A DNA stretch of 64,000 nt from Pecten maximus (Eukaryota): assembly GCF_902652985.1 (NCBI RefSeq), contig NC_047018.1:12214001-12278000 (forward strand), written 5' to 3'. Each line of letters begins with the position of its first letter. Within the stretch, counting starts at the first letter, position 1. Both the position numbers and the translations under genes were made by a program. A model generated the notes under the pieces. The model did no database searches. It was not told where the DNA came from and worked only from the letters and a program-made list of their open reading frames with translations. Shown in pieces: positions 1,658 to 57,627 of the stretch.

Positions 1658-4600
1658 ATGGAAAATATAGCTGACTTTTATTCTAAGAAAGGCTACTTTT
1701 CTGGAATCACTGTTTTGTCAGCAGAAGAGGTGAAAAAGTTACAGACACACTTTGGCCAACTCGAGGAAAACGCAGGTAATATATTTTTTCTATACAAAAA
1801 TACGTATAGTGTTATCATTACGCAGAATAAATAATGACTTAAAAACCGAATAATACTATTGATGGTATGTAAAAATAATATATATTTTTAAACATTGAAT
1901 ATTTTTGTTTACTTTCATATATAGTCAGTGCTCGAAAAGCGTAACTAAACAATATATAACAGAACAACAATAGTTATAAAATATAATACATAGCAGTGTT
2001 ATTAATCACCGCTCACAGACTTGGGACTTAATTATCAATTGAACCAAAGCACAGTTGAAGTCAACTATCAATTGCGCTTTTATTGTTTCATAGCAAATCA
2101 ACCTAATGTAACACACAGTTCTTCAGGGCGTTACAATGTATCTCTACGAATGTTCTATTGTATCGTTGTTAACTGAGGAGAGCTGGTCTTGTTCCTTGTT
2201 TATTGATAGGCATTAGAACTGAGGAGAGCTGGTCTTGTTCCTTGTTTATTGATACTCAATAGAACTGAGGAGAGCTGGTCTTGTTCCTTGTTTATTTATA
2301 CTCGTTAGAACTGAGGAGAGCTGGTCTTGTTCCTTGTTTATTGATACTCATTATAACTGAGGAGAGCTGGTCTTGTTCCTTGTTTATTTATACTCATTGG
2401 AACTGAGGAGAGCTGGTCATGTTCCTTGTTTATTGATACTCATTAGAACTGAGGAGAGCTGGTCTTGTTCCTTGTTTATTGATAGTCATTAGAACTGAGG
2501 AGAGCTGGTCTTGTTCCTTGTTTATTTATACTCATTAGAACTGAGGAGAGCTGGTCTTGTTCCTTGTTTATTTATACTCATTGGAACTGAGGAGAGCTGG
2601 TCTTGTTCCTTGTTTATTTATACTCATTAGAACTGAGGAGAGCTGGTCATGTCCCTAGTTTATTTATAGTCATTAGAACTGAGGAGAGCTGGTCTTGTTC
2701 CTTGTTTATTGATAGTCATTAGAACTGAGGAGAGCTGGTCTTGTTCCTTGTTTATTTATACTCATTGGAACTGAGGAGGGCTGGTCTTGTTCCTTGTTTA
2801 TTTATAGTCATTAGAACTGAGGAGGGCTGGTCTTGTTCCTTGTTTATTTATAGTCATTAGAACTGAGGAGAGCTGGTCTTGTTCCTTGTTTATTGATAGG
2901 CATTAGAACTGAGGAGAGCTGGTCTTGTTCCTTGTTTATTGATACTCAATAGAACTGAGGAGAGCTGGTCTTGTTCCTTGTTTATTTATACTCGTTAGAA
3001 CTGAGGAGAGCTGGTCTTGTTCCTTGTTTATTGATACTCATTATAACTGAGGAGAGCTGGTCTTGTTCCTTGTTTATTTATACTCATTGGAACTGAGGAG
3101 AGCTGGTCATGTTCCTTGTTTATTGATACTCATTAGAACTGAGGAGAGCTGGTCTTGTCCCTTGTTTATTGATAGTCATTAGAACTGAGGAGGGCTGGTC
3201 TTGTTCCTTGTTTATTTATACTCATTGGAACTGAGGAGGGCTGGTCTTGTCCCTTGTTTATTGATACTCATTAGAACTGAGGAGAGCTGGTCTTGTTCCT
3301 TGTTTATTGATACTCATTGGAACTGAGGAGGGCTGGTCTTGTCCCTTGTTTATTGATAGTCATTGGAACTGAGGAGAGCTGGTCATGTTCCTTGTTTATT
3401 GATACTCATTAGAACTGAGGAGAGCTGGTCTTGTTCCTTGTTTATTTATACTCATTAGAACTGAGGAGGGCTGGTCTTGTTCCTTGTTTATTTATACTCA
3501 TTGGAACTGAGGAGGGCTGGTCATGTTCCTTGTTTATTGATAGTCATTAGAACTGAGGAGAGCTGGTCTTGTTCCTTGTTTATTGATACTCATTAGAACT
3601 GAGGAGAGCTGGTCTTGTTCCTTGTTTATTGATACTCATTAGAACTGAGGAGAGCTGGTCTTGTTCCTTGTTTATTTATACTCATTAGAACTGAGGAGAG
3701 CTGGTCTTGTTCCTTGTTTATTTATACTCATTGGAACTGAGGAGAGCTGGTCTTGTTCCTTGTTTATTTATACTCATTAGAACTGAGGAGAGCTGGTCTT
3801 GTTCCTTGTTTATTTATACTCATTGGAACTGAGGAGAGCTGGTCTTGTTCCTTGTTTATTTATAGTCATTAGAACTGAGGAGGAGCTGGTCTTGTTCCTT
3901 GTTTATTTATAGTCATTAGAACTGAGGAGAGCTGGTCTTGTTCCTTGTTTATTTATACTCATTAGAACTGAGGAGAGCTGGTCTTGTTCCTTGTTTATTT
4001 ATAGTCATTAGAACTGAGGAGAGCTGGTCATGTTCCTTGTTTATTGATACTCATTAGAACTGAGGAGAGCTGGTCTTGTCCCTTGTTTATTGATACTCAT
4101 TGGAACTGAGGAGGGCTGGTCTTGTTCCTTGTTTATTGATACTCATTAGAACTGAGGAGGGCTGGTCTTGTTCCTTGTTTATTTATACTCATTAGAACTG
4201 AGAAGGGCTGGTCTTGTTCCTTGTTTATTGATAGTCATTGGAACTGAGGAGAGCTGGTCATGTTCCTTGTTTATTTATACTCATTAGAACTGAGGAGGGC
4301 TGGTCTTGTTCCTTGTTTATTGATACTCATTAGAACTGAGGAGAGCTGGTCTTGTCCCTTGTTTATTGATAGTCATTAGAACTGAGGAGAGCTGGTCTTG
4401 TTCCTTGTTTATTTATACTCATTGGAACTGAGGAGAGCTGGTCTTGTTCCTTGTTTATTTATACTCATTAGAACTGAGGAGAGCTGGTCTTGTTACTTGT
4501 TTATTGATAGTCATTGGAACTGAGGAGAGCTGGTCTTGTTCCTTGTTTATTGATACTCATTAGAACTGAGGAGAGCTGGTCATGTTCCTTGTTTATTGAT

Positions 4601-5833
4601 AGTCATTAGAACTGAGGAGGGCTGGTCTTGTCCCTTGTTTATTTATACTCATTAGAACTGAGGAGAGCTGGTCTTGTCCCTTGGTTATTCATAGTCATTG
4701 GAACCGAGGAGAGCTGGTCTTTCATAGTCATTGAAACGGGGAGAGGCCAGTTTCAACTGCACAGTACAAGTTAAGACAAGATTGAGTACATATGTTTAAC
4801 AAAAATTTAGTGACCATTTGGAAGAATGTGTACTGTTATGTTAGGTTGGTCTCTATTTATTTACAGGTAAGGAAGGCGCTCAGTACTCTCTTCACAATGT
4901 TCATCTTAAACACTCATGGGTGATGGAAATCGCATCACATCAAAATATACTTCTCCATGTCCGCCAGATCCTCGGCCAGAACATCATACTTCTCGACTCA
5001 CGGTTCATCTGTAAATACCCGGAAACAGAATTAGCCCGGCCGGATGGGGCCAAGCCCTTTGTCGCATGGCACCAGGATATCAGGTATATGCTCTAAATAT
5101 CAAATAATTTCCGCAACTTTTTTTTTTTGGAACGATTTCGGGATTATTAGACAAAATGTCTATTGACGTGCTTTGTAAGGAAATTTTAATTAACAAATAA
5201 TATAAATATCAATGATAATGAATAACTACAAAATTTATGTTTCCAGATACTGGGGTGTGGACGGTGAGGTGGTCACTGCTTGGCTCGCGGTGGATGATGC
5301 TGACACGGAGAACGGATGCATGTGCGTTATACCTGGTATGGCCCGATATATTTTTGTAACATAAATCATTATGTACTCTAAATTTTTAAGTTTATACACA
5401 TTTGAAGAAAAACAAGTTTTCGTTAAATGAAAAACTAATTTGTTCCTATCTTCGGGTTTTGTAATTATCAGGAACACACACTATGGGGATACTTGAACAC
5501 AAGGTTGCCGAGGAAAAAGGAAATTTGTTGTCATCGAACCAGTCTATACCGATTCACCTATTGGACGTTACGAAGTCTACCCCGTGTCCGGTCAATGCCG
5601 GACAAATGTCGCTGCATTCCGGCCTCCTTGTACACGGAAGCGATCCCAACAAATCTAATCGGAGGCGATGTGGCTTCGTCATCAGATACGTATCTACGGA
5701 GGCGAAGCCAATTAAAGATCCTAACAGACCAAGATCTTTCCCAGCAACCGTCGTAGTAAGTGGTGCTGATGAACACAAACATTTTGAGGACCATAGCCCT
5801 GATTGGTTCTCCATTCAGCCTTTGACCGTCTAG
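1658..5833 (+). CDS. Phytanoyl-CoA dioxygenase (PhyH)-family Fe(II)/2-oxoglutarate-dependent dioxygenase, 4 exons, ~261 aa
   Basis: Exons 1658-1775, 4867-5083, 5247-5335, 5472-5833 have GT-AG boundaries and consistent phases (786 nt). Motifs: FYSKKGY, VAWHQD (HxD), VTAWLAVDDADTENGCMCVIPGTH, LLVHGSDPNKSNRRRCG (distal His and 2OG-binding Arg). AATAAA at 5913. Confidence 0.9.
2171..4720. repeat. 46-bp minisatellite (~55 copies) filling intron 1 of the dioxygenase gene
   Basis: Unit aactgaggagagctggtcttgttccttgtttattgatactcattag in head-to-tail copies with a few polymorphic positions. Confidence 0.97.
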
Positions 5834-6104
5834 AATGGTTACGACTTTAAACAGTTGTAAATCAACTGTACATTGTGATACATTATGCTGAACAATATTT
5901 ATAAAAACTAGAAATAAATCATTGCAGAAAAAATCGGATACTCTGTTGTCAATTTAAGAATTACACAATGTATCTACATTATATGTTAATCGCGATCAAC
6001 GTTAACAATGTCAAAGCAGCATAATTTACATTTCGTACTAATTATATGCTAAATCAAGGTTAATTTGTTGCCAATATGTTGATCATCCATTGTTGGTTTC
6101 GTTA

Positions 6105-10644: not shown

Positions 10645-12633
10645 CATATGCGAAATGGATTGGACTAACAACAACGAGTATCCCCGTTAGAACTGCACGA
10701 CAGTTAAAGCGAAAGTACACGTAGTCGTCACGTGTCTTTAAGTACTGCGGGGTTTCCCGTTCTAAATATAAATACGACTAATGATGCATATGACTATGAG
10801 TCATTTCAAATTCCAAGAACAATGTCATATCAACGTTTTCTAAAAAAAATCTGTAGAAACAAATAATTAATTGATGGAAAGTTATATATAGGGTAAGAGA
10901 AATAAGTAACTATGGTTATGGAGTTATATATCGAGAAAAAGAAATTAGTAAAGATGGGTAAAGAATTATATAAAGTCAAAATGAAATAAGTAACAATAAC
11001 TATGGAGTTTTAAAATAAAAGTGAAGTAAGTATCGATAGTTATGGAGATATATAGAAAAAAGTGAGGTTAATAACAACAGTTGAGTTAAATATAGAGAAC
11101 GTGGGATTAGTATCGATTATTATAGAGCTATATATAAAGGGAAACCGAGTTAGTAACAATAGCTATAAGAGTTATATATAGAGAAAGTGAGTAAGTGATA
11201 TTATACATGACCGTCGAGAGGCAAGCTTGTTGGACCAAATACATGACTCTACAAGACAAGGTAGAGACTAGTTAGAATTGAAATTAGCCGTTCATCATAT
11301 ATAAAATACGGACTTAAAATAAGGATTTTCAGGTCTGACACACAATTTGATATACAAGAAAAACATCCTAGGTGGGGATAAAAACGCCATCATGTTGTTC
11401 TACAAACCAGAACAACAACTACTAGCACACATAGAAAATTGATACAGTAAAAGTACGATTATTTAGTGTAAACAAAAGAAAACAATGAAATTGATAAATA
11501 TTGTCTAGTGTTATAATGACATTAGGGAATAGGTTTATATGGCCGCCGGTATCTATGTATTGCAGCATCATACAATCTAAAACATGACGAAGGAAAACCA
11601 AATATATGATCATTACAACATACACAAAACTAACAAATAGACATCTAAGTAGCACCTCTAAAGGCAGCAGTCTGGTATGTATCCATATTCCTGCTATAGT
11701 TTGGCGGACTGCTCCACACCTGGGCGGCCCTGAAACGGTAAAACTCTTGGGATCTCCATCTGCCTTTACTAGAGGATTTCTGAATCAAAATATTGATTTT
11801 GTTAGGTTGGTAGGAATACATGTTATTAAATATGCGAAGTCTTTAAATGAGTCTTTTTGGCTACCAAATATATTTAAATCCTGACAAATCTGAAGGACGA
11901 AGCCATCAGTGCTTTTTGCCGATATCAGTTATTAATGGGCTTGGCTATGTAGGCAAAGCCTTGATGTTGATCAGGTGTAGTTTGATCCGTACGACAACTA
12001 TTCGTGTAATCAATGGACATACTGCACTCTTTTCGTGTTCACTAAGTTTCTTGCTTTGTAAATGTCCCTAAAAGATTAATTTATGTTTTAATGAAATCAT
12101 TCATGTTATGATAATGATACTAGGTAAGGGAGAGTGAGTATTTAATACATGCATGTGTATACGCTTCCTCACACACATGAATATAGATATGTATCAGAAT
12201 TATTGTTTTAATTTAGCATACAATGCATTGGTCCATTGATGAAGTGTCTCTTAACCTTATTCACCAGAAAAGAAAGTAAAGTGCCGTAAAAACCACTACT
12301 CATGCGCTGTCTAATAACACCTTAGAAGACGGGCTAGATCTTCCGGGTTTTCCAGTCCATCTGTCTATCAACATCTGAGCTCCGCCTACTTCTGAGAAAC
12401 CGGATTTCATCACATCATCATGCTGATTTATATATATTTTTAACTTAATAATGAAAGTTACTTGTTTTTGAATAAAATCAAACATATATCTGTTGACTGA
12501 AGACGAACAAATTTTCAATAAGACTTGCGTGTATTTATTTCACTCTAGCAAGTACATATTAGACGTTTGATTTTTATTAGTTGTGAAGATATTCCAGGTT
12601 TGTGGACAGATTGTGTCGGAGATGTAAATAACT

Positions 12634-12703: not shown

Positions 12704-12754
12704 CTGGGAAAAGAGATTTTTCGCTATTGTTTACATCGATTTACACGCGTCAAG

Positions 12755-15607
12755 ATGATGTTTGCACGTTCTTTAGCTGGGCAGGTCTGTATATTTAGTT
12801 AAGGCTTTGACTTTAAATGTCACTGTATGTTAGTATGGTATATTTTAAATTCCATTGTGTGTTGGTATTGCATACTTTAAATACATGATGTTGAAACTTA
12901 TACATTTCGTGATATGACATATCAAAACTTTATTAATGTGATTATATACAGACTCTTTTATTATCATTGATTTTCAAAATAATTTCATAATGAAATTTGA
13001 TACAAAAAAAAAGAAATTATCGGTAAATAGATTTTACCTGACGGAGTCTTACTCAATATCACACTTTTATTGACTTATGATTTCCAAAACAGTACTGGTA
13101 TAGATGAAACTTATTATTTTTCAGCGGCAAATAGGTCATTCCTTCAACCGCTCGCTCACTGAAGCCAATAGTCGGTATTCTACGGTCTCCGCTCCGCCAT
13201 CTGTTACCGTCAGACGGTGCTACTCACATCACGTAATCCAGACACAAGGTACAAACAGTCATCATAGAAAATCTAAATTTTAAATAATATCTGCATATAT
13301 TTGGTCTTCTTGAACAAGTTGGAATAATGAGTAGTATGTGTGTCCAAAATGTGTTGGGTTACAGAGCCGTTTATTAGTTAGTGCTTTCTTACCATCGGTT
13401 GTTAAGTTAGTGTTGTGTTACCAGCCGTTGTTCGTTTAGTTAGTGTTGTGTAACCAGCTGTTGTTTAGTTAGTTTTGTGTAACCAGCTGTTGTTTAGTTA
13501 GTGTTGTGTAACCAGCTGTTGTTTAGTTAGTTTTGTGTAACCAGCTGTTGTTTAGTTAGTGTTGTGTAACCAGCTGTTGTTTAGTTAGTGTTGTGTTACC
13601 AGCTGTTGTTTAGTTAGTGTTGTATTACCATCTGTTGTTTAGTTAGTGTTGTGTAACCAGTTGTTGTTTAGTTAGTGTTTTGTTACCAGCTGTTGTTTAG
13701 TTAGTGTTGTGTAACCATTTGTTGTTCAGTTAGTGTTTTGTTACCAGCCATTGTTCAGTCAGTGCTGTGTTACCACCCATTGTTCAGTCAGTGCTGTGTA
13801 ACCAGCTGTTGTTTAGTTAGTGTTGTGTAACCACCTGTGGTTCACTCAGGGTTGTGTACTCAGCCGTTGTTAAGCCATTGTTATGTGACTAGCCGTTATG
13901 TTTGTTTAGTTTACGTATTATCATCAAACTTCGTTATTTCCATTGCCTAGAAGCGATCCTTCCTGCCATGAACCTGACAACCTGGATGTCCGACCACATC
14001 TCATGCTTCAGTAAGGCGCATATTTCCCCCTTGGCACAACACAGAAGTAAACGTATGATTCTAGATATCCTCGGCGTAGGAATGATCGGATCAAAGACGG
14101 AAATTGCCAAAAGTTACCGAAATTTTGCGGGAATAGTAGAAGGTTTCCACTCCAACCACAGAGCCTCTGTTTGGGGGGCTGATGGATTGAAGGCATCCAT
14201 GGGGATGTCGGCATATCTTAACGGCGCCAGTTGTCATGCTATGGACTTTGATGACACCTGGCATCCTGCAACCCATCCCAGTGGTCCTGTACTCCCCGCC
14301 TTACTAGCTCTGTCGGAAGCACTGCCATCATCGCAACAACCTTCTCTTGAGGATATCCTGGTGGCTTTTAACATTGGAATTCAGGTCCAGGGAGCATTGC
14401 TTAATTGTTCAAGTCAGGCGAGGAATATTCCCCACCGGTGAGTACTATAATACACTATGTACAAGCAGGTTAAATGGTGCGCTGTTTATTATGTATCTAG
14501 CAAATGTACGTACAGGAAGTAACCACTCTGACATCGTTATGATATCCTGAGTGATATTACCGTTGTGTTCAATAGTATTAAACCTCATGAACCCGTACAT
14601 ACAAATTTGGTAGAGCAATGTTTACTATAAAAATTGTTTCCCGTTATGAACTATTTATCATGGCAACCTAACATTTGTGTTGGTTGTGTTACAGGTTACA
14701 TCCACCAGCCATTGTTGGCGTAATTGGAAGTGCGGCTGCCTGCTCCAGACTGCTGGGTCACGGTCCCCAGAAATGTCGTCACGCTATGGCTATTGCCGCG
14801 TCATTCGCCGGGGCGCCGATGGCGAACGCCGGCACCACAACCAAACCGTTGCATGCTGGGAAGTCAGCTCGTTTTGGTCTGGAGGCTGCCATACTGGCTG
14901 ACAAGGGTATAGAGGGGAATGACAATATTTTAGATATTTCTTCTGGGTTAGGGGCGTTCTTTGAGGATTACAATCCGGAGAAACTTTTCAACACATTAAA
15001 AGGGACCGATGACGTCATTCTTCATCATCAAGACATTGCATTAAAGCGGTTCCCATGTCATCTCGGAATGCATTGGGCTATTGACGCGGCATTGGACACA
15101 AGAAAGCAACTGGTACATGATCGGGGTGACCTTATAGTCGATTTTATAAAACATATCCACATAATCGCCCCAGGTTCTAAATATATTAACAGACCTTTCC
15201 CGACGACCGAACACGAGGCTCGCCATTCCTTCCAGTTTACGACCTGCTCTGCGTTGTTGGACGGTGAAGTTACACCGGAAACCTTTCACGTAAACAACAT
15301 CGATCGACAACAGCTGCACAGTCTCCTCCTGAAAGTCAGAGTTATCACCCCTGAAAAGAATACACCGTCTTTCAACGACATGTACGTGACAGTTGGTGTT
15401 ACAACAAAAGACAACGCCACATTTGAGAGCACGTGTATCGAACCGTATGGACACTGGAGAAAACCATTATCTGATGCCGATGTCGTCAAGAAATTTCGAA
15501 AAAATACTGACTTCCTAAACATTGAATCTCAAAATAGACTGGTGAACTTAGTTTCAAGGATGGACAAGGCACACACTGCCAAAGACATTTTAGAACTACT
15601 TTCTTGA
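12755..15607 (+). CDS. ACOD1: cis-Aconitate decarboxylase (IRG1; MmgE/PrpD family), 4 exons, ~517 aa
   Basis: Exons 12755-12784, 13125-13248, 13951-14437, 14695-15607 (GT-AG, phases 0/1/2, 1554 nt). Motifs HAMDFDDTWHPATHPSG, RLHPPAIVG, ANAGTTTKPLHAG, KRFPCHLGMHW, HEARHSFQF and YGHWRKPLS closely match vertebrate ACOD1. The two 5' exons are less certain than the last two. AATAAA at 15880. Confidence 0.93.
13365..13900. repeat. 29-bp minisatellite in ACOD1 intron 2
   Basis: Unit gttagtgttgtgtaaccagctgttgttta, about 18 copies. Confidence 0.93.
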
Positions 15608-16139: not shown

Positions 16140-16205
<66 letters not shown>

Positions 16206-17559: not shown

Positions 17560-20500
17560 TCAAACAGTATTGGACTACACATTATTGTCATATTGAGTCA
17601 GTCACAGTACTGGACTACACATCAATGCCATATTGAGTCGATGTCAGTATTGGACTACACACCAATGTCATACTGAGTCAGTCACAGTAGTGGACTACAC
17701 ATTAATGTCATATTGAGTCGGTCACAGTATTGGACTACACACCAATGTCATACTGAGTCAGTCACAGTAGTGGACTACATATTGATGTCATATTGAGTCG
17801 GTCACAGTATTGGACTATAGATTGATGTAATTATGAGTTGGTCACAGTACTTGACTAAACATCAATGTCATGTTGAGTCGGTCACAGTACTGGACTACAT
17901 ATTGATGTCATAATGAGTCGGTCACAGTACTGGACTACATATTGATGTCATAATGAGTCGGTCACAGTACTGGACTACACATTGATGTCATATTGAGTCG
18001 GTCACAGTATTGGACTATAGATTGATGTAATTATGAGTTGGTCACAGTACTTGACTAAACATCAATGTCATGTTGAGTCGGTCACAGCACTGGACTACAC
18101 ATTAATGTCATTATGAGTCGGTCACAGTACTGGACTACACATTAATGTCATATTGAGTCGGTCATTGCTGTAGTTATGAGTCAGTCACAGTACTGGACTA
18201 CACATTGATGTCATATTGAGTCGGTGCCAGTATCGGACTACACATTTAAGTCATATTGAGTCGATCTCAGTACTGGACTACACATCAATGTCATATTGAG
18301 TCGGTCACAGTATCAGACTACATATTAATGTCATATTGAGTCGGTCATTGCTGTAGTTATGAGTCAGTCACAGTACTGGACTACATATTGATGCCATATT
18401 GAGTCGGTGACAGTATCGGACTACACATTTAAGTCATATTGAGTCGATCACAGTACTGGACTACACATCAATGTCATATTGAGTCGGTCACAGTATCGGA
18501 CTACACATTAATGTCATATTGAGTCGGTCATTGCTGTAATTATGAGTCAGTCACAGTACTGGACTACACATTAATGTCATATTGAGTCGATGACAGTATC
18601 TGACTACACATTAATGTCATATTGAGTCGATCATTGCTGTAATTATGAGTTGGTCACAGTACTGGACAACACATTAATGTCATAATGAGTCGGTCACAGT
18701 ACTGGACTACACATTAATGTCATATTGAGTCAGTCACAGTACTGGACAACACATTAATGTCATAATGAGTCGGTCACAGTACTGGACTACACATCAATGT
18801 CATACTGAGTCGGTCACAGTACTGGACTACACATTAATGTAATTATGAGTCAGTCACAGTACTGGACTACACATTAATGTCATATTGAGTCGGTCTCAGT
18901 ATTGGACTACACATCAATGTCATACTGAGTCGGTCACAGTACTGGACTACACATTAATGTAATTATGAGTCAGTCACAGTACTGGACTACACATCAATGC
19001 CATATTGAGTCGGTCTCAGTATTGGACTACACACCAATGTCATAATGAGTCGGTCACAGTACTGGACTACACATTAATGTCATATTGAGTCGGTCACAGT
19101 AGTGGACTACACATTAATGTCATACTGAGTTGGTCACAGTACTGGACTACACATCAATGCCATATTGAGTCGGTCTCAGTATTGGACTACACACCAATGT
19201 CATAATGAGTCGGTCACAGTAGTGGACTACACATTAATGTCATATTGAGTTGGTCACAGTACTTGACTAAACATTGATGTCATATTGAGTCGGTCACAGT
19301 ATTGGACTATAGATTGATGTAATTATGAGTTGGTCACAGTACTGGACTAAACATTGATGTCATATTGAGTCGGTCACAGTACTGGAGTACACATCAATGT
19401 AATAATGAGTCAGTCACAGTACTGGACTACACATCAATGTCATGTTGAGTCAGTCACAGTACTGGACTACACATTAATGTCATATTGAGTCGGTCACAGT
19501 ACTGGACTACACATCAATGTCATATTGAGTCGGTCACAGTACTGGAGTACACATCAATGCCATATTGAGTCGGTCACAGTACTGGACTACACATCAATGT
19601 CATGTTGAGTCAGTCACAGTACTGGACTACACATCAATGTCATAATGAGTCAGTCACAGTACTGGACTACACATCAATGTCATATTGAGTCGGTCACAGT
19701 ACTGGACTACACATCAATGTCATATTGAGTCGGTCACAGTACTGGACTACACATCAATGTCATATTGAGTCGGTCACAGTACTGGACTACATATTGATGT
19801 CATAATGAGTCGGTCACAGTACTGGAGTACACATCAATGTCATGTTGAGTCGGTCACAGTACTGGAGTACACATCAATGTCATATTGAGTCGGTCACAGT
19901 ACTGGAGTACACATCAATGTAATAATGAGTCAGTCACAGTACTGGACTACACATCAATGTCATATTGAGTCGGTCACAGTACTGGACTACACATCAATGT
20001 CATATTGAGTCGGTCACAGTACTGGAGTACACATCAATGTAATAATGAGTCAGTCACAGTATTGGACTACACATCAATGTCATGTTGAGTCGGTCACAGT
20101 ACTGGACTACATATTGATGTCATAATGAGTCGGTCACAGTATTGGACTACATATTGATGTCATAATGAGTCGGTCACAGTACTGGACTACACATTAATGT
20201 CATATTTAGTCGGTCACACTACTGGACTACACATTGATGTCATATTGAGTCGGTCACAGTATTGGACTATCGATTGATGTAATTATGAGTTGGTCACAGT
20301 ACTGGACTAAACATTGATGTCATATTGAGTCGGTCACAGTATTGGACTATAGATTGATGTAATTATGAGTTGGTCACAGTACTGGACTACACATTGATGT
20401 CATATTGAGTCGGTCACAGTACTGGAGTACACATCGATGTCACACTGAGCCGGTCACAGTACTGAGCTACACATCAATGTCATGTTGAGTCGGTCACAGT

Positions 20501-20877
20501 ACTGGACTACATATTGATGTCATAATGAGTCGGTCGCAGTACTGGACTACACATTAATGTCATACTGAGTCAGTCACAGTACTGGACTACACATTGATGT
20601 CATACTGAGTCGGTCACATTATTGGACTACACATTGATGTCATATTGAGTCGGTCACAATACTGGACTATACAGTAATGTCATATTGAGTCAGTCACAGT
20701 ATCGGACTACACATTAATGTCATAATGAGTCAGTCACAGTACTGGATTACACATTAATGTCATTATGAGTCGGTCACAGTATCGGACTACACATTTAAGT
20801 CATATTGAGTCGTTCACAGTATCGGACTATACATAGATGTCATAATGAGTCAGTCACAGTACTGGACTACACATTAA
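17560..20877. repeat. 40-bp satellite (~80 copies)
   Basis: Unit cacagtactggactacacattaatgtcatattgagtcggt; one orphan copy at ~23320-23360. Confidence 0.97.
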
Positions 20878-38800: not shown

Positions 38801-38815
38801 GTATTCAGTTGTAAA

Positions 38816-50250: not shown

Positions 50251-50750
50251 TAATATGTACAACCAACACTAAATATAATATGATAATGATATGGTTTTTT
50301 ATTATTATTTTGAATCTTAAAGCAAGTGTGTTCATTATATCATAAGTAAATACATATGGTCTGCATTTATCGATCGTGCAATATTTGTTATGGAGCTATG
50401 ACACCGTATTTTTTTAATTTTGTTTTGTCCACACACATATATATATATGTTTGTCCATTGTACCATCCTTCTAGCTTTAGTCCCGAGTTTATGCTGCCGA
50501 ATGACATGCTTTCGTTCATTACACTATACCCTGTATCATGGTTATATTGTTTCCGTCACAAATATAAAAACCAGTTGATAGATGATTATTTCAACTTTGT
50601 ACGTACTATTGTCGAGTAAGACAAAATCTCAATAACTCCGACGAAATGTGATTATTTTCAAAATGTTAAAAACAGTCCAATACCAGTACCAGGATATTTA
50701 GGAAACTGTAATACCTAGAAGGTCACTACATACGTGCTATAAACTCATGT

Positions 50751-53700
50751 TCAGTTTGTATCGATAAACGCTGGATTTGTTTTTTGTCCGCTGACGGTGG
50801 CCTTGCCGCCAATTGTTTTTGCTGTTTGTACAAGTGCCGTGCTCTGTTCAAAATGTGGCTGTATCTTAATCGCTGTTACCCCAGATTCATCCAAACTCGG
50901 GTTGTTGTCAAAGCCAATCGAAGATGTACCGCTGTCACTGGCGCTGTCCTGAGTGCTACTTCTGACTTTCTCGAACATCTCCTCGACTTTAAACTTTGGT
51001 GTCACACCTATCCGGAAGAAGCCTATTTTTCCATCCTTGATTTTTCGGCAGTCAACTACAGTGGAAGCAAGATTTTCAGGTGATGGACCGTCCGCAAGAA
51101 TTCCGTCACACTGAAAAGAATAAACATCTTCAATTATAACCAACGGATTAGTGTCTTTAGTCATGGTTATGCGACAAATCATTGACGTCGTTTGTACAAT
51201 TCATTAGGTGTACTATTTAGTGAATACATTTACAATATTATCAGGTGTTAATATACTGTCATATATATTAGTGACATACAGTGTTGTGTCGTTTTCTTAC
51301 ATTGTTTACTCCCAGTTTGGCTAGAACCTGAAGGTGGTGGGTGGTGTCTACCTCTCCGGTAGGATTTGCTGCCGTCACTGCTATAGGACCGGTCTGATCA
51401 ATCAGATGACATGTGATAGTTCTGTCCGGAATTCTCAATGCTATACTGTCTGGTTTACCTATAAGTCTCTCGGCCCCTCCTAATCCTAGTGACTTGACCC
51501 ATTCACCTGTTGTAAAAATCATATGCACATAACCAGCAGGAAACAGTTAAACTGTGATACGTGGTATTTTCAGCTTCCAATTATTAATTTATATTAGTAA
51601 CATCACTGCTACCCCTGTTTACGTGTTTACTTGTCCTAGTTGATGGAGACCATATAAAGGCGTTATCGTCGACGTCAGGATCTCAGTATGCGGTATGACG
51701 TCAGGCGTGCGGTATGACGTCAGGCGTACGTTATACTTCTTGATATGCCATTAGCTTAGTTCTCATTTTCAGATTGTGACTTTACCTGGATTTGATTTAG
51801 ATTGGTATGGCGGGTTCCGTCGATGAAGCAGAAAAAGAATATTTTGTTTAATTTTTGACATCCCCTGGAATCGTTTCCTGGTAATATCTTATGTTTGGTT
51901 TTCAGTGCCTGCTATACAGGAAGGACGTAAGAAAAACTGTCTACTGGGTAATTACAATTACTGTCTACTTGGTAATTACAACTGTCTACTGTATAATAAC
52001 ATTTTTATCTACTTGGTAATTACAACTGTCTACTGGGTAAAAACAATTATCTAATTTGTAATTACATTTACTGTCTACTGGATTATAACAATTACTATCT
52101 ACGTGGTAATAACAATTACTATCTACTGGGTAATAACAATTACTATCTACTGGGTAATAATAATTACTATCTACTGAGTAATATCAATTACTGTCTACTG
52201 GGTAATAATAATTACTATCTACTGGGTAATATCAATTACTGTCTACATGTTTAAAACAATTACTAGTTACTATGTAATAACAATTACGCACCTTTGTTGA
52301 GGACTAAGCTGATATTTGAGGGCCACACTTCCTGCATGAATCTCCAACATACATCACCCAAATCGGCGCGAGCATTCTCTATCTGTTTGAGGTTGGAAAT
52401 CCAAACTGACATTGGCCGATCCTCCGCCAGTTTCTTGATATTATAAGCCCTCTGAAACAAAACACACATCTTCGTTACTATAATGTAAGTCACTTTGTGA
52501 AACTTATCTTACCCAGTGAGACCCTAGACCCATAAGTAGTACGTTGAACTCTCTCTGTAACATCGCTTTACTCTCTTATAACTTATATATCTGCATAATC
52601 TTATATGAACGATCGCTAAACTATATTCTAGAACAACGTGTAATAAATATTGCTATGGTTATATCAACTGAAATTCATATATATTTCTTAACCCCACCAT
52701 GACAAACACGGAATGTCCTGTCACGAATATGAACATATCATTTTATACGATCTTGGTTCCTATAGATGTGTTTGTACTCCTTACATATATAGAAACTATA
52801 CCATAGATAAGACATCGTAGATTTACAATAGACTTACATCAGCAATGTTTGTAATGTTTACATTTCAAATAACCCTCTCACGTTTAAACCAGGATGAGCA
52901 ATATAATCGGAAATTCCCAACAAGTTCCATTAAGAACCAAGTGATTTATATTCATTACCTAGAACTTACTTAAGTGTTGTCAACGATATTTCAAGTTCAG
53001 AATACAATTTATCGATAATATTGAAGTTTAGCATCTGTCATCAGCTATGCGACAAATAGATAGATTGTCAAAACACTTTTAGTGACAAACATTCTAATAA
53101 GGTTGAGATGAAATGCTAACTATAAAAGAATGATGACCTCCAGTTCAGGCCTGACTATTGGACTAATATTTCACTATGCTGACGTCAAATTCAGACCTGA
53201 CCAGTGGACTAATATTTCACTATGCTGACGTCAAGTTCAGGCCTGACCAGTGGACTAATATTTCGCTATGCTGACCTCCAGTTCAGGCCTGACTAGTGGA
53301 CTAATATTTCACTATGCTGATGTCCAGTTCAGGCCTGACCAGTGGACTAATATTTCACTATGCTGACGTCCAGTTCAGGCCTGACCAGTGGACTAATATT
53401 TCACTTTGCTGACCTCCAGTTCAGGCCTGACCAGTGGATTAATATTTAACTATGCTGACATTAGTTCAGACCTAACTAGTGGACTAATATTGCACTATGG
53501 TGACCTCCAGTTCAGGCCTGACTAGTGGACTAATATTTAACTATGCTGACGTCAAGTTCAGACCTAACTAGTGGACTAATATTGCACTATGGTGATCTCC
53601 AGTTCAGGCCTGACCAGTGGACTAATATTTCACTTTGCTGACCTCCAGTTCAGGCCTGACCAGTGGATTAATATTTAACTATGCTGACATTAGTTCAGAC

Positions 53701-56700
53701 CTTACTAGTGGACTAATATTGCACTATGGTGACCTCCAGTTCAGGCCTGACTAGTGGACTAATATTTAACTATGCTGACGTCAAGTTCAGACCTAACTAG
53801 TGGACTAATATTGCACTATGGTGATCTCCAGTTCAGGCCTGACCAGTGGACTAATATTTCACTTTGCTGACCTCCAGTTCAGGCCTGACCAGTAGATTAA
53901 TATTTCACTATGCTGATGTCCAGTTTGGGCCTGACAGGTGGGCCGATATTTGCAATTGATTTCGTACACTATTAATTAAAATAGGTTATGCTATTTTCGG
54001 TAATATCATGTTAATACCACGACCGATTTAATTGAATCGTATCTATTTTGAATTTACCTTCTTCACTTGTGGGCTAGTAAATTAAATTTATATCTACTTT
54101 CGATGTCTGCGACCTTACCTCCACTGCCTTTGGGTGGTTGCACGCAGCCACCAATACATACACGGTGTCTGTGGGAATGCCGCAAATACCGCCGTCTTTC
54201 AGAATTTCTGTGAAATATAAATAAAACGAACTTGTACACCATTGTCTTAAAAAACAAATCTGAATGAACATAAAATTTAAATTACTCGAGTTGATTCGCG
54301 CTAATTTAAAAACCTTTTTCTATACTAATATGATGTTTGTGTTTCCTCGTACCTGCTGTTTGTTTCACTCCGGTTGCCCGCCTAGGATCCATGAACAGCG
54401 CCCTGTAGCGATCCGAGTGAAGTTTGCTTACTTGGAGGATAGGTTTTCCCAGTGGAAGAATATCCCTCCCCCAGACATTCCTCAGCATTATTGACAAAAC
54501 TCCGTATAGAAAGATCAGAACATACGCTATAGCAACTGTTTTCTCAAACCCACCATAATTACTAGCTTTTAACCCACGCAGCATGAACGCGACAACGAGA
54601 AGGCAAAACACTGAGGAATTCATCACCCAAATTTTATTAACGGTGGTAGACATTCCGAGAAAAAGCAGACCAGTCACTAGGAAACCAACCAAGCCAACCA
54701 CCAGAGGAACTCCCTCTGATCCTTCAATAACATTTAGTGCTCTTAATGACCCCCAAATTGACCAAAAACTCCCATAAAGAAGGAACGAACAACTTTCAAA
54801 TGTCAGCCCTCTAGAGAAACTTACAAAACCTACGACAAATTGAATAAGACCCCCGAAACCTACGGTCCAAGGAAGGATCAATGGATCTGAACCCGAGGGT
54901 ATCCATACTAGAGAAAATGCAGCTACAGCATTGGCCGCGAATCCTACACTTTGGGAGTCAACATACTTGGAATAACCAAGCATTATATCTTCTGAAAGTT
55001 TATTAGAATATGATGAAACGTCTACAGTTTTTCTCGAATTGCCTATGTTTTGGAATATTGTCAGAATTTCTTTGACTTTCGCCCTTTCTGTGATGTTGCT
55101 ACCCAATGGAAACCCTATTTCCAGTCCTACAAGACTGGTGGTGGTGGCTATTAACCCGTAGATTGACAGGAGAACTCCTAACAAACCAATCACCCCTACA
55201 AATGTGCCCTGTAGTCCATCCACACCTAAAGAAAGAGCAAACAGCGACATCATCAGAAAATATATAGACCTAAACAATTCCAGTTTCACTTCTACTATTG
55301 AAATCAAAAAGAAGAACAAAACCAAGACAGCCGATGTGGGAATAATGAAATCCATTTCTCTCCACAAATAGTTTTCCGCCATTAAACTTGACCCCACACC
55401 TAGCCAGAACAACCCAAATATAATGGCGTTGCCTGCATTGTGAGGATCAGACTGTCTAAGTGACGCAATACCGATGACGATTTGGAAAATACCGGAAGTC
55501 AGCAACCATGGAAAGGAAAAGCGTGTGTCAGAAATGATATTGATAACATAACTAGCAAAAGTTGTAAAACAAACAGCATTAAGAGCATACATCATAATTA
55601 GATGATGCTTAAACAATGATTTATGTGACGTTTTCACATTAGTTTCCAAATTGCCCGGGCCAATAGAATTGAAGTGTTTATAATAAGCGGCTACATTTGA
55701 AAGAGAAAAATAAAGAAAAAACAAAGACAGTAGAATCTGAAGAACTGCGGTTCCTTGTAAACTAACAAACATATTAATGATTTCGAACGTTACCAGAACC
55801 ACAGAGATTACTGAGACAACACTACATGACCGGAAGTCCCTGTTAGTTAGTGAAGTGCCCAGGAAAACGAGAAATACCAGCAGTAAGCCGCCATAACCAG
55901 TAAACAAGGCTTCGTGAGGAGATATGTAGTTCTCAGACGATACATTCTGGGAGTAATTGACCTCTGTCCATATGTGATTGACCCCAACGCTTGACCAGAG
56001 CACTGCCAGACAAAGGACGACTGACTGAAGCAACTGTCTGTGATGGGAGGGTGACGTCACACCTGTAACACCCAGTAAGTAAAGTGAAGAGCATAAATAT
56101 ATTTTAGTACGTTGGTGATAATGTAATACTTATCGAACAGATAGTTACGTTATATACAAAGTTTACCGAAGAGAATTGAATACCGTTATATACAAAGTTT
56201 ACCGAAGAGAATTGAATACTTCTCGAGCAGGTAATATGCGATGAATGTAATAATTGATATATCACAAGTGAAAGTGATTTATCTTAATAAACAGGATACA
56301 TACGTACATTGTTTTGTATACGAAGAAAATCATAACGAAGACAAAATAATTTTGATTTTATTTGACATCGAATAAACACTACAGTTTGTTTGCTGCTTAA
56401 GTAAGAAGCGAATAGATAAATGCCACAGTTTGCTGGCTGATCAAGTAAAAAAAAATTAAACGCCACAGTTTCCTGGCTGATCAAGTAAAATAATTTTTTA
56501 AAAAGCGCCAGTTTTCTGGATGATCAAGTAAAATAAATTAACGCAACAGTTTTCTGGCTAATCAAGTAAAAATATAAATAAATAAATAAATAAATAAACT
56601 CCGCAGATAGTTCGAATATCAAAATGAATAACAACAGCGAACCACTTGTCGCAATAAATTCAACGAAAATAGTGCAAAAATAGCATTGAATGAAATTATT

Positions 56701-56911
56701 TATTTATTTATCACATTATGTACAGTAATACAAACTTACCAGTAAGTAGGAATGTCAGGGAGAGGACTACCAGTGAGGCACCGTACGGTATATTGTCTAT
56801 TACTGCCACAGATCGAGATGTCGTAATAGAATTGACAGTGGTGAGAGCTGAGAGAATGCTGGCCACCAAGAACCCAGCCGCCGCGGTCGAGTCCGCGTTG
56901 ATGCCGCTCAT
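50751..56911 (-). CDS. Polytopic membrane protein: ~3 tandem SatP/Ady2 (GPR1/FUN34/YaaH)-like repeats fused to a C-terminal YrdC/Sua5-like domain, 6 exons, ~898 aa
   Basis: Exons 56911-56740, 56062-54353, 54207-54119, 52451-52292, 51506-51301, 51110-50751, all GT-AG with consistent phases (2697 nt). SatP-like GFGGLIQFVVGFVSFSRGLTFESCSFLLYGSFW and GRDILPLG. YrdC-like LKDGGICGIPTDTVY, VWPSNIS, IALRIP, AVTAANPTG, ASTVVD, FRIG. Confidence 0.88.
51937..52285. repeat. 24-bp minisatellite in intron 4 of the fusion gene
   Basis: Unit actatctactgggtaataacaatt. Confidence 0.9.
53134..53950. repeat. 46-bp minisatellite with a 5-monomer higher-order repeat, in intron 3 of the fusion gene
   Basis: Unit tgacctccagttcaggcctgaccagtggactaatatttcactatgc; the variant pattern recurs every ~229 bp (53403, 53632, 53861). 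Confidence 0.93.
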
Positions 56912-57464
56912 TTTCTTAGGCTTTTGGTTGAAAGTTTAGTGTTGATGATACCCTTCACTTTGTGTACCACTTATATATCAAACAGTGTAGAGTACAGGTT
57001 CAGGTAATACCTAGTCAGCCACTATTACTGTGTGTATTTGTTAGAAGACATGTGGTATCGAAAAACAAACTACTGACGATTTTTTTTCTTCTTCCTGGTT
57101 TGCGAAAGTCGGCCTATGATTGGACTTAAAGTCGCTGTCATAAAAGTACACACACATATATAAACATATGTATTAAGATTAGGGTGGAGTATGTCAGGTA
57201 CATTTAGGTATATTTATTTATCACCGATTTCCTGGTATATACCTCGTGGTGGCGAGACACCCAGGGGGCGGTACAGCTGTAGGTCGTAGTTGGCAACAGG
57301 GAACGCCCCCTTCAGGTCATCAATATTCATTGATAGAATGGTAGATATAACAAACAGTGATGAAAGCAAATCCGTGTAATGTGGGGTATATAAACGGGAA
57401 ACAGATATCAGGCTACTTATATTGACCATTTCTATCCTGAAAAGAATCACTTTTGTGTGTAAAG
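56912..57464. promoter_or_regulatory. Putative bidirectional promoter with two outward-facing TATA boxes
   Basis: Minus-strand TATATAAG at 56977-56970, plus-strand TATATAAA at 57387-57394; 553 bp between the two ATGs; GC-rich and kB-like motifs at 57264-57310. Confidence 0.6.
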
Positions 57465-57627
57465 ATGGAGGAGTCTCGAACGAGCGGTCGCGGGCTTCCC
57501 TTCGCGTCCCTACTCTACAGTGAGCCCGGGGCCCTGGGACTCATGGCCAACATCATGTCCGCTCTGATTGTAGCCATCAGTAACATGGTGATAGGAGACG
57601 AAACAAAACTCACTCTCGTTATAGCAG
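57465..57627 (+). CDS. First coding exon of a second SatP/GPR1/FUN34/YaaH-like membrane protein; the gene continues beyond the window
   Basis: MEESRTSGRGLPFASLLYSEPGALGLMANIMSALIVAISNMV...LVIAG followed by CAG|GTAAGT. YSEPGALGLM resembles the family TM1 signature ANPAPLGL. The phase-1 intron is at a similar position to exon 1 of the divergent gene. Confidence 0.65.

What the first reader, a model, noticed from the sequence alone, without database searches (positions are those of the whole stretch)
1658..57627. Candidate animal itaconate gene cluster: ACOD1 + 2OG dioxygenase + SatP-like carboxylate channels + YrdC-like domain
Seen: the only host genes I can reconstruct in 64 kb are a PhyH-family dioxygenase, ACOD1, a SatP-repeat/YrdC fusion and a second SatP-like gene, separated by repeats and TEs. 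Established: ACOD1 makes itaconate (methylenesuccinate) plus CO2. SatP/Ady2 proteins conduct succinate, acetate and related carboxylates. PhyH enzymes turn 2-oxoglutarate into succinate plus CO2 while hydroxylating a substrate. YrdC folds join CO2/bicarbonate, an amino acid and ATP. Fungal itaconate clusters (Aspergillus terreus, Ustilago maydis) also combine synthase, transporters and an oxygenase. Inference: this is a co-regulated synthesis/tailoring/export module for itaconate or a derived antimicrobial metabolite, i.e. a biosynthetic gene cluster in an animal.
Basis: partly seen in the sequence, partly recalled or inferred. Interest (0 to 1): 0.92.

Follow-up and report, generated by a model that had tools for sequence, protein, structure and literature searches.

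The report
Ancient animal gene cluster around itaconate synthase
In the king scallop, the enzyme that makes the immune metabolite itaconate sits beside a dioxygenase, two carboxylate-channel/YrdC fusion genes and three small glyoxalase-type genes, and the same neighbourhood is kept in limpet, oyster, amphioxus and fish, so this looks like a rare, very old animal metabolic gene cluster whose chemistry is still untested.

Summary
The window is Pecten maximus DNA. It carries a 261-aa PhyH-type dioxygenase gene and an ACOD1/IRG1 gene with all eight catalytic residues. It also carries a six-exon gene, F1, that fuses three 6-helix SatP/Ato-like units to a YrdC domain. RNA contigs from two studies confirm the F1 splicing. 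The "second SatP-like gene" is exon 1 of a divergent paralog, F2, that continues past the window. Three GLOD5/STM3117-type VOC genes flank the block.

Every copy of these gene types that I found in the 918-Mb genome lies within about 82 kb. The linkage is not species-specific:
- Lottia has PhyH, ACOD1, F1 and F2.
- The oyster has PhyH, ACOD1 and F1.
- Amphioxus has two fusions next to ACOD1.
- The pipefish has DJ-1-like, F1, F2 and IRG1L.
- The pike has PhyH, DJ-1-like and F1.

Four zebrafish transcriptome papers place irg1l with these neighbours in one induced module. STM3117-type VOC proteins also accompany itaconate genes in Salmonella and Ustilago.

Two preprints already describe parts of this (the IRG1L synteny and the Ato–Sua5 fusion family), but neither makes the functional link. 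Export and tailoring of itaconate are plausible but unproven.

The parts
1658..5833 (+). PhyH-type Fe(II)/2-oxoglutarate dioxygenase gene, 261 aa. Exons 1658-1775, 4867-5083, 5247-5335 and 5472-5833. Intron 1 holds a 46-bp satellite.
   Evidence: Open segments and GT/AG borders. Pfam PhyH on exons 3 and 4 at 31.3 and 23.5 bits against a cut-off of 22. WHQD and VHGS motifs are present in the sequence. Orthologs are adjacent to ACOD1 in Lottia and Saccostrea, with 64-66% identity on the last exon. A pike ortholog (56%) lies next to DJ-1-like and F1. Single copy in the genome.
12755..15607 (+). ACOD1/IRG1-type cis-aconitate decarboxylase gene, 517 aa (P0022). Exons about 12755-12784, 13122-13247, 13950-14438 and 14690-15607.
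   Evidence: Pfam MmgE_PrpD N and C domains. E 2e-134 against human CAD structure 6r6u. All eight mutagenesis-validated active-site residues are conserved. Arg/Ser-rich N-terminal extension of about 55 aa. Single copy in the genome.
50751..56911 (-). F1: a fusion of three 6-helix units with a YrdC domain, 898 aa (P0001). Only the last unit is securely SatP/Ato-like. Exons 56911-56738, 56060-54353, 54207-54119, 52451-52289, 51503-51301 and 51110-50751.
   Evidence: tblastn of P0001. RNA contig joints with GT..AG ends in runs from two studies. Pfam Sua5_yciO_yrdC E 4e-31. The SatP match on the third unit is below cut-off here but above it in fish ortholog P0007. PDB SatP entries 5zug/5ys3 match with E 2e-4 to 4e-4, and Sua5 with E 6e-20. 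18 hydrophobic helices.
56912..57464 (.). 553-bp spacer between the divergently transcribed F1 and F2. Presumed shared bidirectional promoter.
   Evidence: The start codons of both genes face away from it. The alignment with the Ylistrum spacer shows conserved blocks, for example TTTCTTCCTGGTT..GAAAGTCG..CTATGATTGG and GGGAACGCCCCCT. Promoter function is inferred, not tested.
57465..57627 (+). Exon 1 of F2, the second (type 2) SatP x3/YrdC fusion gene. The remaining exons lie beyond the window at window-equivalent 65.4-69.7 kb. A LINE sits in intron 1.
   Evidence: 78% identity to exon 1 of the 855-aa Ylistrum gene. Further exons were found in the fetched flank. Pfam Gpr1_Fun34_YaaH at 37.4 bits and Sua5_yciO_yrdC on the flank exons. 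Canonical KGRP and TSANPSGEP motifs are present.

Best explanation
This is the scallop copy of an ancient bilaterian gene block built around the itaconate synthase (pIRG1; IRG1L in vertebrates).

Proposed working:
1. An infection- or injury-responsive programme switches the block on as a unit.
2. The ACOD1 enzyme, probably in the mitochondrial matrix, decarboxylates cis-aconitate to itaconate.
3. The two paralogous membrane proteins F1 and F2 each carry three SatP/Ato-like 6-helix units. They probably pair into a six-unit ring like the SatP hexamer. They conduct itaconate or a derivative across a membrane, most likely out of the cell or into a vesicle.
4. Their C-terminal YrdC domain faces the cytosolic side and acts as a nucleotide-binding regulatory or adenylating module.
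5. The PhyH-type dioxygenase and the GLOD5/STM3117-type VOC proteins modify or detoxify itaconate or a close derivative. This parallels Cyp3 and Rdo1 of Ustilago.

Shown here:
- gene identities;
- the spliced fusion transcript;
- clustering of all genomic copies;
- conservation of the neighbourhood in molluscs, amphioxus and teleosts;
- intact ACOD1 and PhyH catalytic residues;
- the subfamily assignment of the VOC genes.

Taken from papers: co-induction in zebrafish, and loss of both IRG1L and the fusion family in mammals.

Inferred: the substrate of the channels, the reactions of PhyH, VOC and YrdC, the membrane involved, and F1/F2 pairing.
For: Conserved linkage:
- Ylistrum: ACOD1, then F1 25 kb away, then F2 and a VOC gene.
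- Lottia: PhyH, ACOD1, F1 and F2 within 23 kb.
- Saccostrea: PhyH and ACOD1, plus a type-1 YrdC match 10 kb downstream.
- Branchiostoma: two fusions next to ACOD1.
- Pipefish: DJ-1-like, F1, type-2 YrdC exons and IRG1L.
- Pike: PhyH, DJ-1-like and F1.
- Both fusion types occur in protostomes and deuterostomes, so the pair predates their split.

Genome-wide, all copies sit in this one ~82-kb region. A separate canonical YRDC locus exists on another contig.

Co-expression in zebrafish:
- Shigella infection (PMC6980646).
- WGCNA hub genes irg1l.3 and .5 (PMC11140123).
- r = 0.86-0.90 with irg1l over 18 conditions (PMC8877790).
- Top-5 induced genes (PMC9228135).

Co-loss: IRG1L is absent in therian mammals (10.1101/2022.06.17.496652). 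The fusion family is absent in mammals (10.1101/2025.05.26.656167).

Cross-kingdom association of the VOC subfamily with itaconate:
- The best PDB matches of the scallop VOC exons are GLOD5 and STM3117.
- STM3117 lies in the Salmonella itaconate response operon.
- The closest characterised homolog of Ustilago Rdo1 is STM3117.
- A GLOD5-like gene is strongly induced in itaconate-producing A. niger.

SatP proteins carry succinate and acetate, and itaconate is methylenesuccinate (established knowledge).
Against: - No transport or enzyme assay exists for any neighbour.
- I have no co-induction data for molluscs.
- The zebrafish module also contains unlinked genes (sult5a1 and si:ch211-207n23.2 have r about 0.9), so co-expression is not exclusive to the block.
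- The authors of the IRG1 preprint inspected the synteny and reported no obvious functionally related clustering.
- In the scallop, 35 kb of repeats separates ACOD1 from F1.
- In Mizuhopecten, the two orthologs are listed on scaffolds of different length (770,065 against 790,838 bp). I could not resolve this.
- No neighbour was seen within 10 kb of the Octopus gene, or downstream of F1 in a parrot.
- The F1 YrdC domain lacks the Arg of KxR, and in the scallop also the Ser of SxN.
- Mammals make and export itaconate without F1, F2 or IRG1L.
Confidence: 0.6

Rival explanations
1. The genes form a co-regulated innate-defence or stress block without a shared pathway. They are held together by shared enhancers or one chromatin domain and switch on together at epithelia or in immune cells, but they act on unrelated substrates. 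Itaconate is only the product of one member.
For: Co-expression and conserved linkage are all that is shown directly, and neither needs a common metabolite. The zebrafish module includes unlinked genes. The IRG1 preprint saw no obvious functional relation.
Against: Order and orientation inside the block are shuffled between lineages. PhyH is inverted in scallops relative to limpet and oyster, and F1/F2 are divergent in molluscs but convergent in the pipefish. This is less typical of enhancer-locked blocks. The recurrence of the STM3117/GLOD5 VOC subfamily with itaconate genes in a bacterium and in fungi is hard to explain without a chemical link. A succinate/acetate-type channel next to a methylenesuccinate synthase is a specific fit.
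Confidence: 0.2
2. The block is a self-protection or clearance module rather than a tailoring and export module. The VOC, the dioxygenase and (in vertebrates) the DJ-1-like protein would detoxify or degrade itaconate or its adducts in the producing cell. The channels would take up or redistribute carboxylates such as succinate and acetate, whose metabolism itaconate disturbs.
For: STM3117 sits in a degradation operon, not a synthesis operon. The A. niger GLOD5-like gene rises when itaconate accumulates and is degraded. The closest bacterial relatives of the scallop VOC lie among organic-acid catabolic genes: an FMN-dependent dehydrogenase, a galactarate/altronate-type dehydratase, and LysR and GntR regulators. 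DJ-1/PfpI proteins are known deglycases/glyoxalases (established knowledge).
Against: No CoA-transferase, hydratase or lyase of the known itaconate degradation route was seen in any animal locus. SatP-type channels work in both directions, so the direction of flux cannot be inferred.
Confidence: 0.15
3. The linkage is chance or generic synteny with no functional or regulatory meaning.
For: The scallop genes are spread over about 82 kb with long repeat-filled gaps. Mizuhopecten lists the orthologs on scaffolds of different length.
Against: Adjacency recurs in seven further genomes across molluscs, cephalochordates and vertebrates, with differing outer neighbours. All genomic copies are confined to this one region. 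The genes are co-expressed in zebrafish.
Confidence: 0.03

Closest known systems
Fungal itaconate gene clusters (Ustilago maydis tad1-adi1-mtt1-itp1-cyp3-rdo1-ria1; Aspergillus terreus cadA-mttA-mfsA)
   Same: A decarboxylase that makes itaconate is linked to membrane transporters, an oxygenase and, in Ustilago, a small VOC-type protein (Rdo1). The closest characterised relative of Rdo1 is STM3117, the same subfamily as the scallop VOC genes.
   Different: The parts are not homologous apart from the VOC. The fungi use MFS and mitochondrial-carrier transporters and a P450. The animal block has SatP/Ato-type channels fused to YrdC and a PhyH-type 2OG dioxygenase. No pathway-specific regulator gene is seen in the animal block. 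Ustilago uses a trans-aconitate decarboxylase of another fold.
pIRG1/IRG1L synteny described in bioRxiv 10.1101/2022.06.17.496652
   Same: That preprint already notes that genes with VOC, YrdC, 2OG-Fe(II) oxygenase and GAT domains are syntenic with mollusc/amphioxus pIRG1 and vertebrate IRG1L but not with IRG1. My loci reproduce this independently.
   Different: The authors state that they saw no obvious functionally related clustering. They do not mention that the YrdC genes are carboxylate-channel fusions, that there are two ancient paralogs, that the VOC is of the STM3117 type, or that the genes are co-expressed.
Ato/AceTr x3-Sua5 fusion family described in bioRxiv 10.1101/2025.05.26.656167 (PMC13316224)
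   Same: Same protein family as F1 and F2: about 900 aa, three 6-helix Ato-like units, a C-terminal Sua5/YciO/YrdC domain, two clades, absent in mammals, and a proposed dimer that mimics the SatP hexamer.
   Different: That work calls the function elusive, makes no link to IRG1L or itaconate, and reads the protostome members as possible horizontal transfer. The conserved neighbourhood in scallop, limpet, oyster and amphioxus argues instead for vertical descent from the bilaterian ancestor.
Salmonella itaconate response operon STM3120-STM3117 (SPI-13)
   Same: It contains a VOC protein of the same subfamily as the three scallop VOC genes. My count from the printed alignment is about 60% identity over exon 2.
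   Different: It is a bacterial catabolic operon with CoA-transferase, hydratase and lyase genes. None of these is in the animal block. The function of STM3117 itself is unknown.
Mammalian ACOD1 (IRG1) locus
   Same: Orthologous enzyme family. The catalytic residues are identical.
   Different: According to the IRG1 preprint, the mammalian gene has different neighbours and lacks the targeting sequence. Mammals have no F1/F2.

Membership tests
ACOD1/IRG1 cis-aconitate decarboxylase (MmgE/PrpD fold) | MmgE_PrpD N- and C-terminal domains | tested here: met
   Pfam E 4.6e-29 and 3.4e-19 (N domain) and 1.4e-35 (C domain) on the two large exons.
ACOD1/IRG1 cis-aconitate decarboxylase (MmgE/PrpD fold) | Eight active-site residues shown by mutagenesis in human CAD (Asp93, Thr97, His103, His159, Lys207, Lys272, His277, Tyr318) | tested here: met
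   All eight are identical in the phmmer alignment to chain 6r6u/12ux, after allowing for the +1 offset of the chain numbering. The residue list is from PMC6789909.
ACOD1/IRG1 cis-aconitate decarboxylase (MmgE/PrpD fold) | Makes itaconate from cis-aconitate | not testable with these tools
   Needs an enzyme assay. Oyster and amphioxus relatives are discussed in 10.1101/2022.06.17.496652.
AceTr / SatP / Ato (Gpr1_Fun34_YaaH) carboxylate channels | Pfam PF01184 match above the gathering score | tested here: met
   F2 exon 2 scores 37.4 bits in two stretches and is the only genome-wide hit. Scallop F1 scores only 18.5-20.2 bits against a cut-off of 25. Its fish ortholog P0007 scores 32.9 bits, and the family profile matches SatP structures 5zug/5ys3 at E 2e-4 to 4e-4.
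AceTr / SatP / Ato (Gpr1_Fun34_YaaH) carboxylate channels | Three consecutive homologous 6-helix units | tested here: inconclusive
   Hydropathy and the model's secondary structure give 18 helices in a 6+6+6 pattern. Units 2 and 3 align over 144 columns at hhalign E 0.006. Unit 1 shows no detectable similarity. My full-length model was too poor to use (pLDDT 39). The triplication is shown structurally for a vertebrate member in 10.1101/2025.05.26.656167.
AceTr / SatP / Ato (Gpr1_Fun34_YaaH) carboxylate channels | Conducts short carboxylates | not testable with these tools
   Needs flux assays.
TsaC/Sua5/YrdC threonylcarbamoyl-AMP synthase | Sua5_yciO_yrdC domain | tested here: met
   F1 has Pfam E 4e-31 and E 6e-20 to Sua5 structures. 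F2 exons have E 1.5e-14 and 1.1e-9.
TsaC/Sua5/YrdC threonylcarbamoyl-AMP synthase | KxR and SxN motifs of the active site (their importance is recalled from the TsaC/Sua5 literature, not re-read here) | tested here: not met
   F1 (type 1) has K-K-L-A-E-D-R-P where Sua5 has K-N-R-P-V-D-N-P, so the Arg is replaced. The scallop has TAAN in place of TSAN. The altered motif is invariant from molluscs to birds. F2 (type 2) keeps KGRP and TSANPSGEP. F1 should therefore not be filed as a TC-AMP synthase, while F2 might retain such chemistry. A separate canonical YRDC locus exists on contig C5.
PhyH-type Fe(II)/2-oxoglutarate dioxygenase | PhyH domain with the HxD...H iron triad and the 2OG-binding Arg | tested here: met
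   Pfam PhyH scores 31.3 and 23.5 bits on exons 3 and 4 against a cut-off of 22. WHQD, VHGS and RRR are read directly in exons 2 and 4. HxD rather than HxA/G argues for a hydroxylase, not a halogenase, despite the weak NCBIfam 'chlorinating enzyme' matches.
GLOD5/STM3117 subfamily of VOC (glyoxalase-fold) proteins | Closest solved relatives are GLOD5 and STM3117 across the exons | tested here: met
   Exon 2: 3zw5 at E 1.5e-16 and 3hnq at E 6.5e-16. Exon 3: 3zw5 at E 2.9e-15 and 3huh at E 5e-11. Exon 1: Pfam Glyoxalase at E 3.5e-8.
Metabolic (biosynthetic) gene cluster | Non-homologous genes physically linked, with the linkage conserved | tested here: met
Metabolic (biosynthetic) gene cluster | Co-regulation of the members | tested here: inconclusive
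   Supported for zebrafish orthologs by four papers. Not tested for the scallop: the laid runs are contigs and cannot rank expression.
Metabolic (biosynthetic) gene cluster | Members act in one pathway | not testable with these tools
   Needs genetics and metabolite analysis.

The most novel reading that the evidence does not exclude
The bilaterian ancestor already had a true metabolic gene cluster for itaconate-based chemical defence. It comprised the synthase (pIRG1/IRG1L), a PhyH dioxygenase, a GLOD5/STM3117-type VOC enzyme and two SatP x3-YrdC proteins.

In this reading:
- The dioxygenase and the VOC enzyme convert itaconate into an oxidised or isomerised derivative, as Cyp3 and Rdo1 do in Ustilago.
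- The two fusion proteins pair into a six-unit channel that secretes the product at epithelia or into phagosomes.
- Mammals lost the block together with IRG1L and kept only IRG1 and GLOD5. The uncharacterised human GLOD5 would then be an enzyme of itaconate metabolism.
Probability: 0.3. Interest if true: 0.95.

Novelty: new variant of a known kind. Interest (0 to 1): 0.8.

Why it matters
Metabolic gene clusters are common in fungi, plants and bacteria but very rare in animals. A four-to-six-gene block kept since the bilaterian ancestor around an immunometabolite synthase would be a striking exception.

It offers testable candidates for several open questions:
- how non-mammalian animals move itaconate across membranes;
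- what the newly described Ato x3-Sua5 family does;
- what STM3117, Rdo1 and GLOD5-type proteins do with itaconate;
- whether animals make itaconate derivatives.

It also explains why the fusion family and IRG1L are both missing in mammals. It revises the suggestion that the protostome members arrived by horizontal transfer.

Tried and rejected
**Transfer of the whole block from a bacterium.**
- A pattern scan of 185,579 prokaryotic genomes with an ACOD1 alignment gave no confirmed relative.
- The genomic context of a close bacterial PhyH relative, in two copies, holds no MmgE/PrpD, SatP, YrdC or VOC partner.
- Nine bacterial loci that encode close VOC relatives (47-66% identity in the best segment) have no ACOD1, SatP, YrdC or PhyH match. 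They lie among assorted organic-acid genes.
- Conclusion: no support, but only a thin sample.

**Structure.**
- The full-length AlphaFold model of F1 from 14 sequences had mean pLDDT 39.
- I used only its helix count and ran no fold search.

**Repeat homology.**
- Unit 1 of F1 shows no similarity to units 2 or 3 by blastp or hhalign.

**Wider family sampling.**
- The alignment-based homolog search returned only six proteins.
- The Atlas search confirmed only that the family is eukaryotic and mostly chordate.

**NF-kB-like sites.**
- There are 13 matches against 2.2 expected.
- Most are palindromes counted twice, or a 37-bp tandem duplicate at 35.2 kb.
- That stretch has no match in the Ylistrum DNA held. 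I did not use these sites as evidence.

**Gaps I could not close.**
- The Octopus flanks show nothing within 10 kb.
- Look-ups of the Pecten proteins themselves are withheld by the tool.

- Multi-exon genes without a database protein (PhyH, VOC, F2) were searched exon by exon by reference.

Full report
**What the window is.** The ORFs match NCBI proteins of Pecten maximus at 99-100% identity. The window is G000:C4:12214001-12278000 on a 52.7-Mb chromosome. It is AT-rich. It is full of minisatellites: a 46-bp array at 2171-4721, a 40-bp array at 17564-20877, and others.

**The genes.**

- **PhyH-type dioxygenase (+).**
  - I reconstructed four exons with GT/AG borders: 1658-1775, 4867-5083, 5247-5335 and 5472-5833, giving 261 aa.
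  - Pfam PhyH matches exons 3 and 4.
  - The WHQD and VHGS iron ligands and an Arg cluster are intact in the sequence.

- **ACOD1 (+, 12755-15607, four exons).**
  - It equals P0022, 'cis-aconitate decarboxylase-like'.
  - It aligns to human CAD (6r6u) at E 2e-134.
  - It keeps all eight residues whose mutation abolishes or strongly reduces activity (PMC6789909).
  - It has an Arg/Ser-rich N-terminal extension of about 55 aa. This fits the mitochondrial targeting reported for mollusc pIRG1 (10.1101/2022.06.17.496652).

- **F1 (-, 50751-56911).**
  - It equals P0001, 898 aa.
  - It has 18 hydrophobic helices in a 6+6+6 pattern, followed by a YrdC domain.
  - RNA contigs from two studies carry all five joints with GT..AG ends. 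One contig links the YrdC exons to the membrane exon, so the fusion is a real mRNA.
  - The third 6-helix unit is a SatP/AceTr homolog. The evidence is NCBIfam AceTr_1, PDB 5zug/5ys3 at E 2e-4 to 4e-4, and a fish ortholog above the Pfam cut-off.
  - Unit 2 resembles unit 3 weakly over its full length. Unit 1 shows no detectable similarity.

- **F2 (+).**
  - Its other exons lie at window-equivalent 65.4-69.7 kb, after a LINE in intron 1.
  - Those exons carry a Pfam-significant Gpr1_Fun34_YaaH match and a YrdC domain.

- **VOC genes, outside the window.**
  - Fetching 40 kb on each side revealed three nearly identical three-exon VOC genes: two upstream of PhyH and one downstream of F2.
  - Their best solved relatives are human GLOD5 and Salmonella STM3117.

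- **Block boundary and other ORFs.**
  - The next recognisable gene to the right is neurensin-like, at +85 kb.
  - Other long ORFs in the window have no Pfam match or belong to a Crypton-like element and a LINE.

**More than chance.**
- In the 918-Mb assembly, ACOD1, this PhyH type and the F1 membrane exon occur once each.
- All three VOC copies are here.
- The only Pfam-level SatP match in the genome is F2.
- A separate canonical YRDC locus lies on another contig. The YrdC domains of F1 and F2 are therefore extra copies, not the housekeeping gene.

**Conservation of the neighbourhood.**

| Species | Genes found, in order (strand) |
|---|---|
| Ylistrum balloti (scallop) | ACOD1, F1 25 kb away, F2, VOC, all on one contig |
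| Lottia gigantea (limpet) | PhyH(-), ACOD1(+), YrdC gene(-), YrdC gene(+), within 23 kb |
| Saccostrea echinata (oyster) | PhyH(-), ACOD1(+), type-1 YrdC exon 10 kb downstream |
| Branchiostoma floridae (amphioxus) | two fusion genes (897 and 924 aa) directly upstream of ACOD1 |
| Syngnathoides (pipefish) | DJ-1-like(-), F1(+), unannotated type-2 YrdC exons(-), MmgE/PrpD gene(+) |
| Esox lucius (pike) | PhyH(+), DJ-1-like(-), F1(+) |
| Guaruba (parrot) | DJ-1-like(-), F1(+) |

- The PhyH genes of scallop, limpet and oyster are 64-66% identical on the last exon.
- The pike PhyH is the best named vertebrate match of the scallop exon (56%).
- Motif comparison separates two paralog types.
  - Type 1 has K-K-x-A-x-D-R-P-M-S-x-W and occurs in molluscs, fish and a bird.
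  - Type 2 has the canonical KGRP..EKP and TSANPSGEP and occurs in scallops, amphioxus and fish.
  - The duplication therefore predates the protostome-deuterostome split.
- Order and orientation differ between lineages and the outer neighbours differ. Membership is what is kept, not a rigid arrangement.

**What the literature already holds.**
- The IRG1 evolution preprint reports that VOC, YrdC, 2OG-Fe(II) oxygenase and GAT-domain genes are syntenic with pIRG1 and IRG1L but not with IRG1. It adds that no obvious functional clustering was seen.
- The Ato-family preprint describes the Ato x3-Sua5 family: two clades, absent in mammals, possible dimer, function elusive. It suggests horizontal transfer for the protostome members.
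- Neither connects the two observations.
- Four zebrafish transcriptome papers list irg1l together with si:ch211-153b23.3/.4/.5, and once with a PHYHD1-like gene.
  - They appear among the top induced genes after Shigella infection.
  - They are hub genes of one WGCNA module.
  - They are top-5 induced genes after PFOS.
  - From the printed log-fold changes over 18 conditions, I computed r = 0.86-0.90 with irg1l. Most other genes in the same table range from -0.47 to 0.50, but two unlinked genes are also near 0.9.
- From the pike and pipefish order, the three zebrafish clone genes are probably DJ-1-like, F1 and F2. This is an inference.

**A cross-kingdom pointer.**
- STM3117 is the fourth gene of the Salmonella itaconate response operon, and its function is unknown.
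- The closest characterised homolog of Rdo1, from the Ustilago itaconate cluster, is STM3117.
- A GLOD5-like gene is among the most induced genes in itaconate-producing Aspergillus niger.
- The scallop VOC genes belong to the same subfamily.
- Proteins of this subfamily thus accompany itaconate genes in Salmonella, Ustilago and animals. In A. niger the link is co-induction, and the subfamily assignment there rests on annotation only. I consider this the strongest hint that the block is chemically, not only transcriptionally, coupled.

**Mechanism.**
- I favour a co-regulated itaconate module, with confidence 0.6:
  1. synthesis by ACOD1;
  2. conduction of itaconate or a derivative by F1/F2;
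  3. modification or detoxification by PhyH and VOC.
- The type-1 YrdC domain has lost the Arg of KxR, yet the altered motif is invariant from molluscs to birds. This suggests a changed but selected function, such as ligand sensing or gating.
- Type 2 may still form an acyl- or carbamoyl-adenylate.
- All of these roles are inferred.

**Rivals.**
- A co-regulated defence block without shared chemistry (0.2).
- A self-protection or clearance module (0.15).
- Chance (0.03).

**Evidence against and gaps.**
- No mollusc co-induction data.
- No biochemical data.
- 35 kb of repeats between ACOD1 and F1.
- Mizuhopecten orthologs on scaffolds of different length.
- Nothing within 10 kb in Octopus.
- No sign that the block came as a unit from bacteria.

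- The earlier-findings look-up returned nothing.

**Verdict.**
Conserved linkage and co-regulation stand, while the proposed chemistry is open.
- The parts are published separately, but the synthesis into an ancient animal itaconate cluster appears new. The library searches found no paper that makes it.

Noticed in passing
window 2171-4721: A 46-bp satellite with 55 copies at 94% identity fills most of intron 1 of the PhyH-like gene. Related-looking 46-bp arrays lie at 53130-53935 (an F1 intron) and 58575-59251 (F2 intron 1).
   Followed up: no
window 24407-26042 (+): Two adjacent ORFs carry QRICH1/DUF3504 and phage-integrase/DUF3435 matches. This is a Crypton-like tyrosine-recombinase element, or a gene derived from one, split into two frames.
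   Followed up: no
window 60292-63729 (-): An intact 1145-aa ORF with endonuclease and reverse-transcriptase domains: a LINE inserted in intron 1 of F2.
   Followed up: no
window 35216-35263: Two palindromic NF-kB-like sites (GGGGAATTCCC and GGGGAATCCCC) lie 37 bp apart inside a tandemly duplicated 37-bp unit, in the gap between ACOD1 and F1. That stretch has no match in the Ylistrum DNA held.
   Followed up: partly
window 12308-12434 and 57089-57123: Short non-coding stretches are conserved with Ylistrum: 73% over 133 bp upstream of ACOD1 exon 1, and 89% over 35 bp in the F1/F2 spacer. They are candidate regulatory elements.
   Followed up: partly
flank of the window, window-equivalent -7.6 to -3.5 kb and +72.9 to +74.8 kb (L008, L009/L010): The three VOC genes are 94-99% identical in exon 2. 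Each has a similar minisatellite in intron 1, so the copies are recent duplicates placed on both sides of the block.
   Followed up: partly
L003 24275-25260 (-), pipefish: Type-2 YrdC exons lie between the annotated fusion gene and the MmgE/PrpD gene, where no gene is called. This is probably an unannotated F2 ortholog.
   Followed up: partly
P0045 and P0143 (ENA contig of 60,616 bp): An ACOD1 homolog (58% identity) and a PhyH homolog (66%) are each recorded on a contig of exactly the same length in an ENA assembly. This is probably another mollusc with the two genes linked.
   Followed up: no
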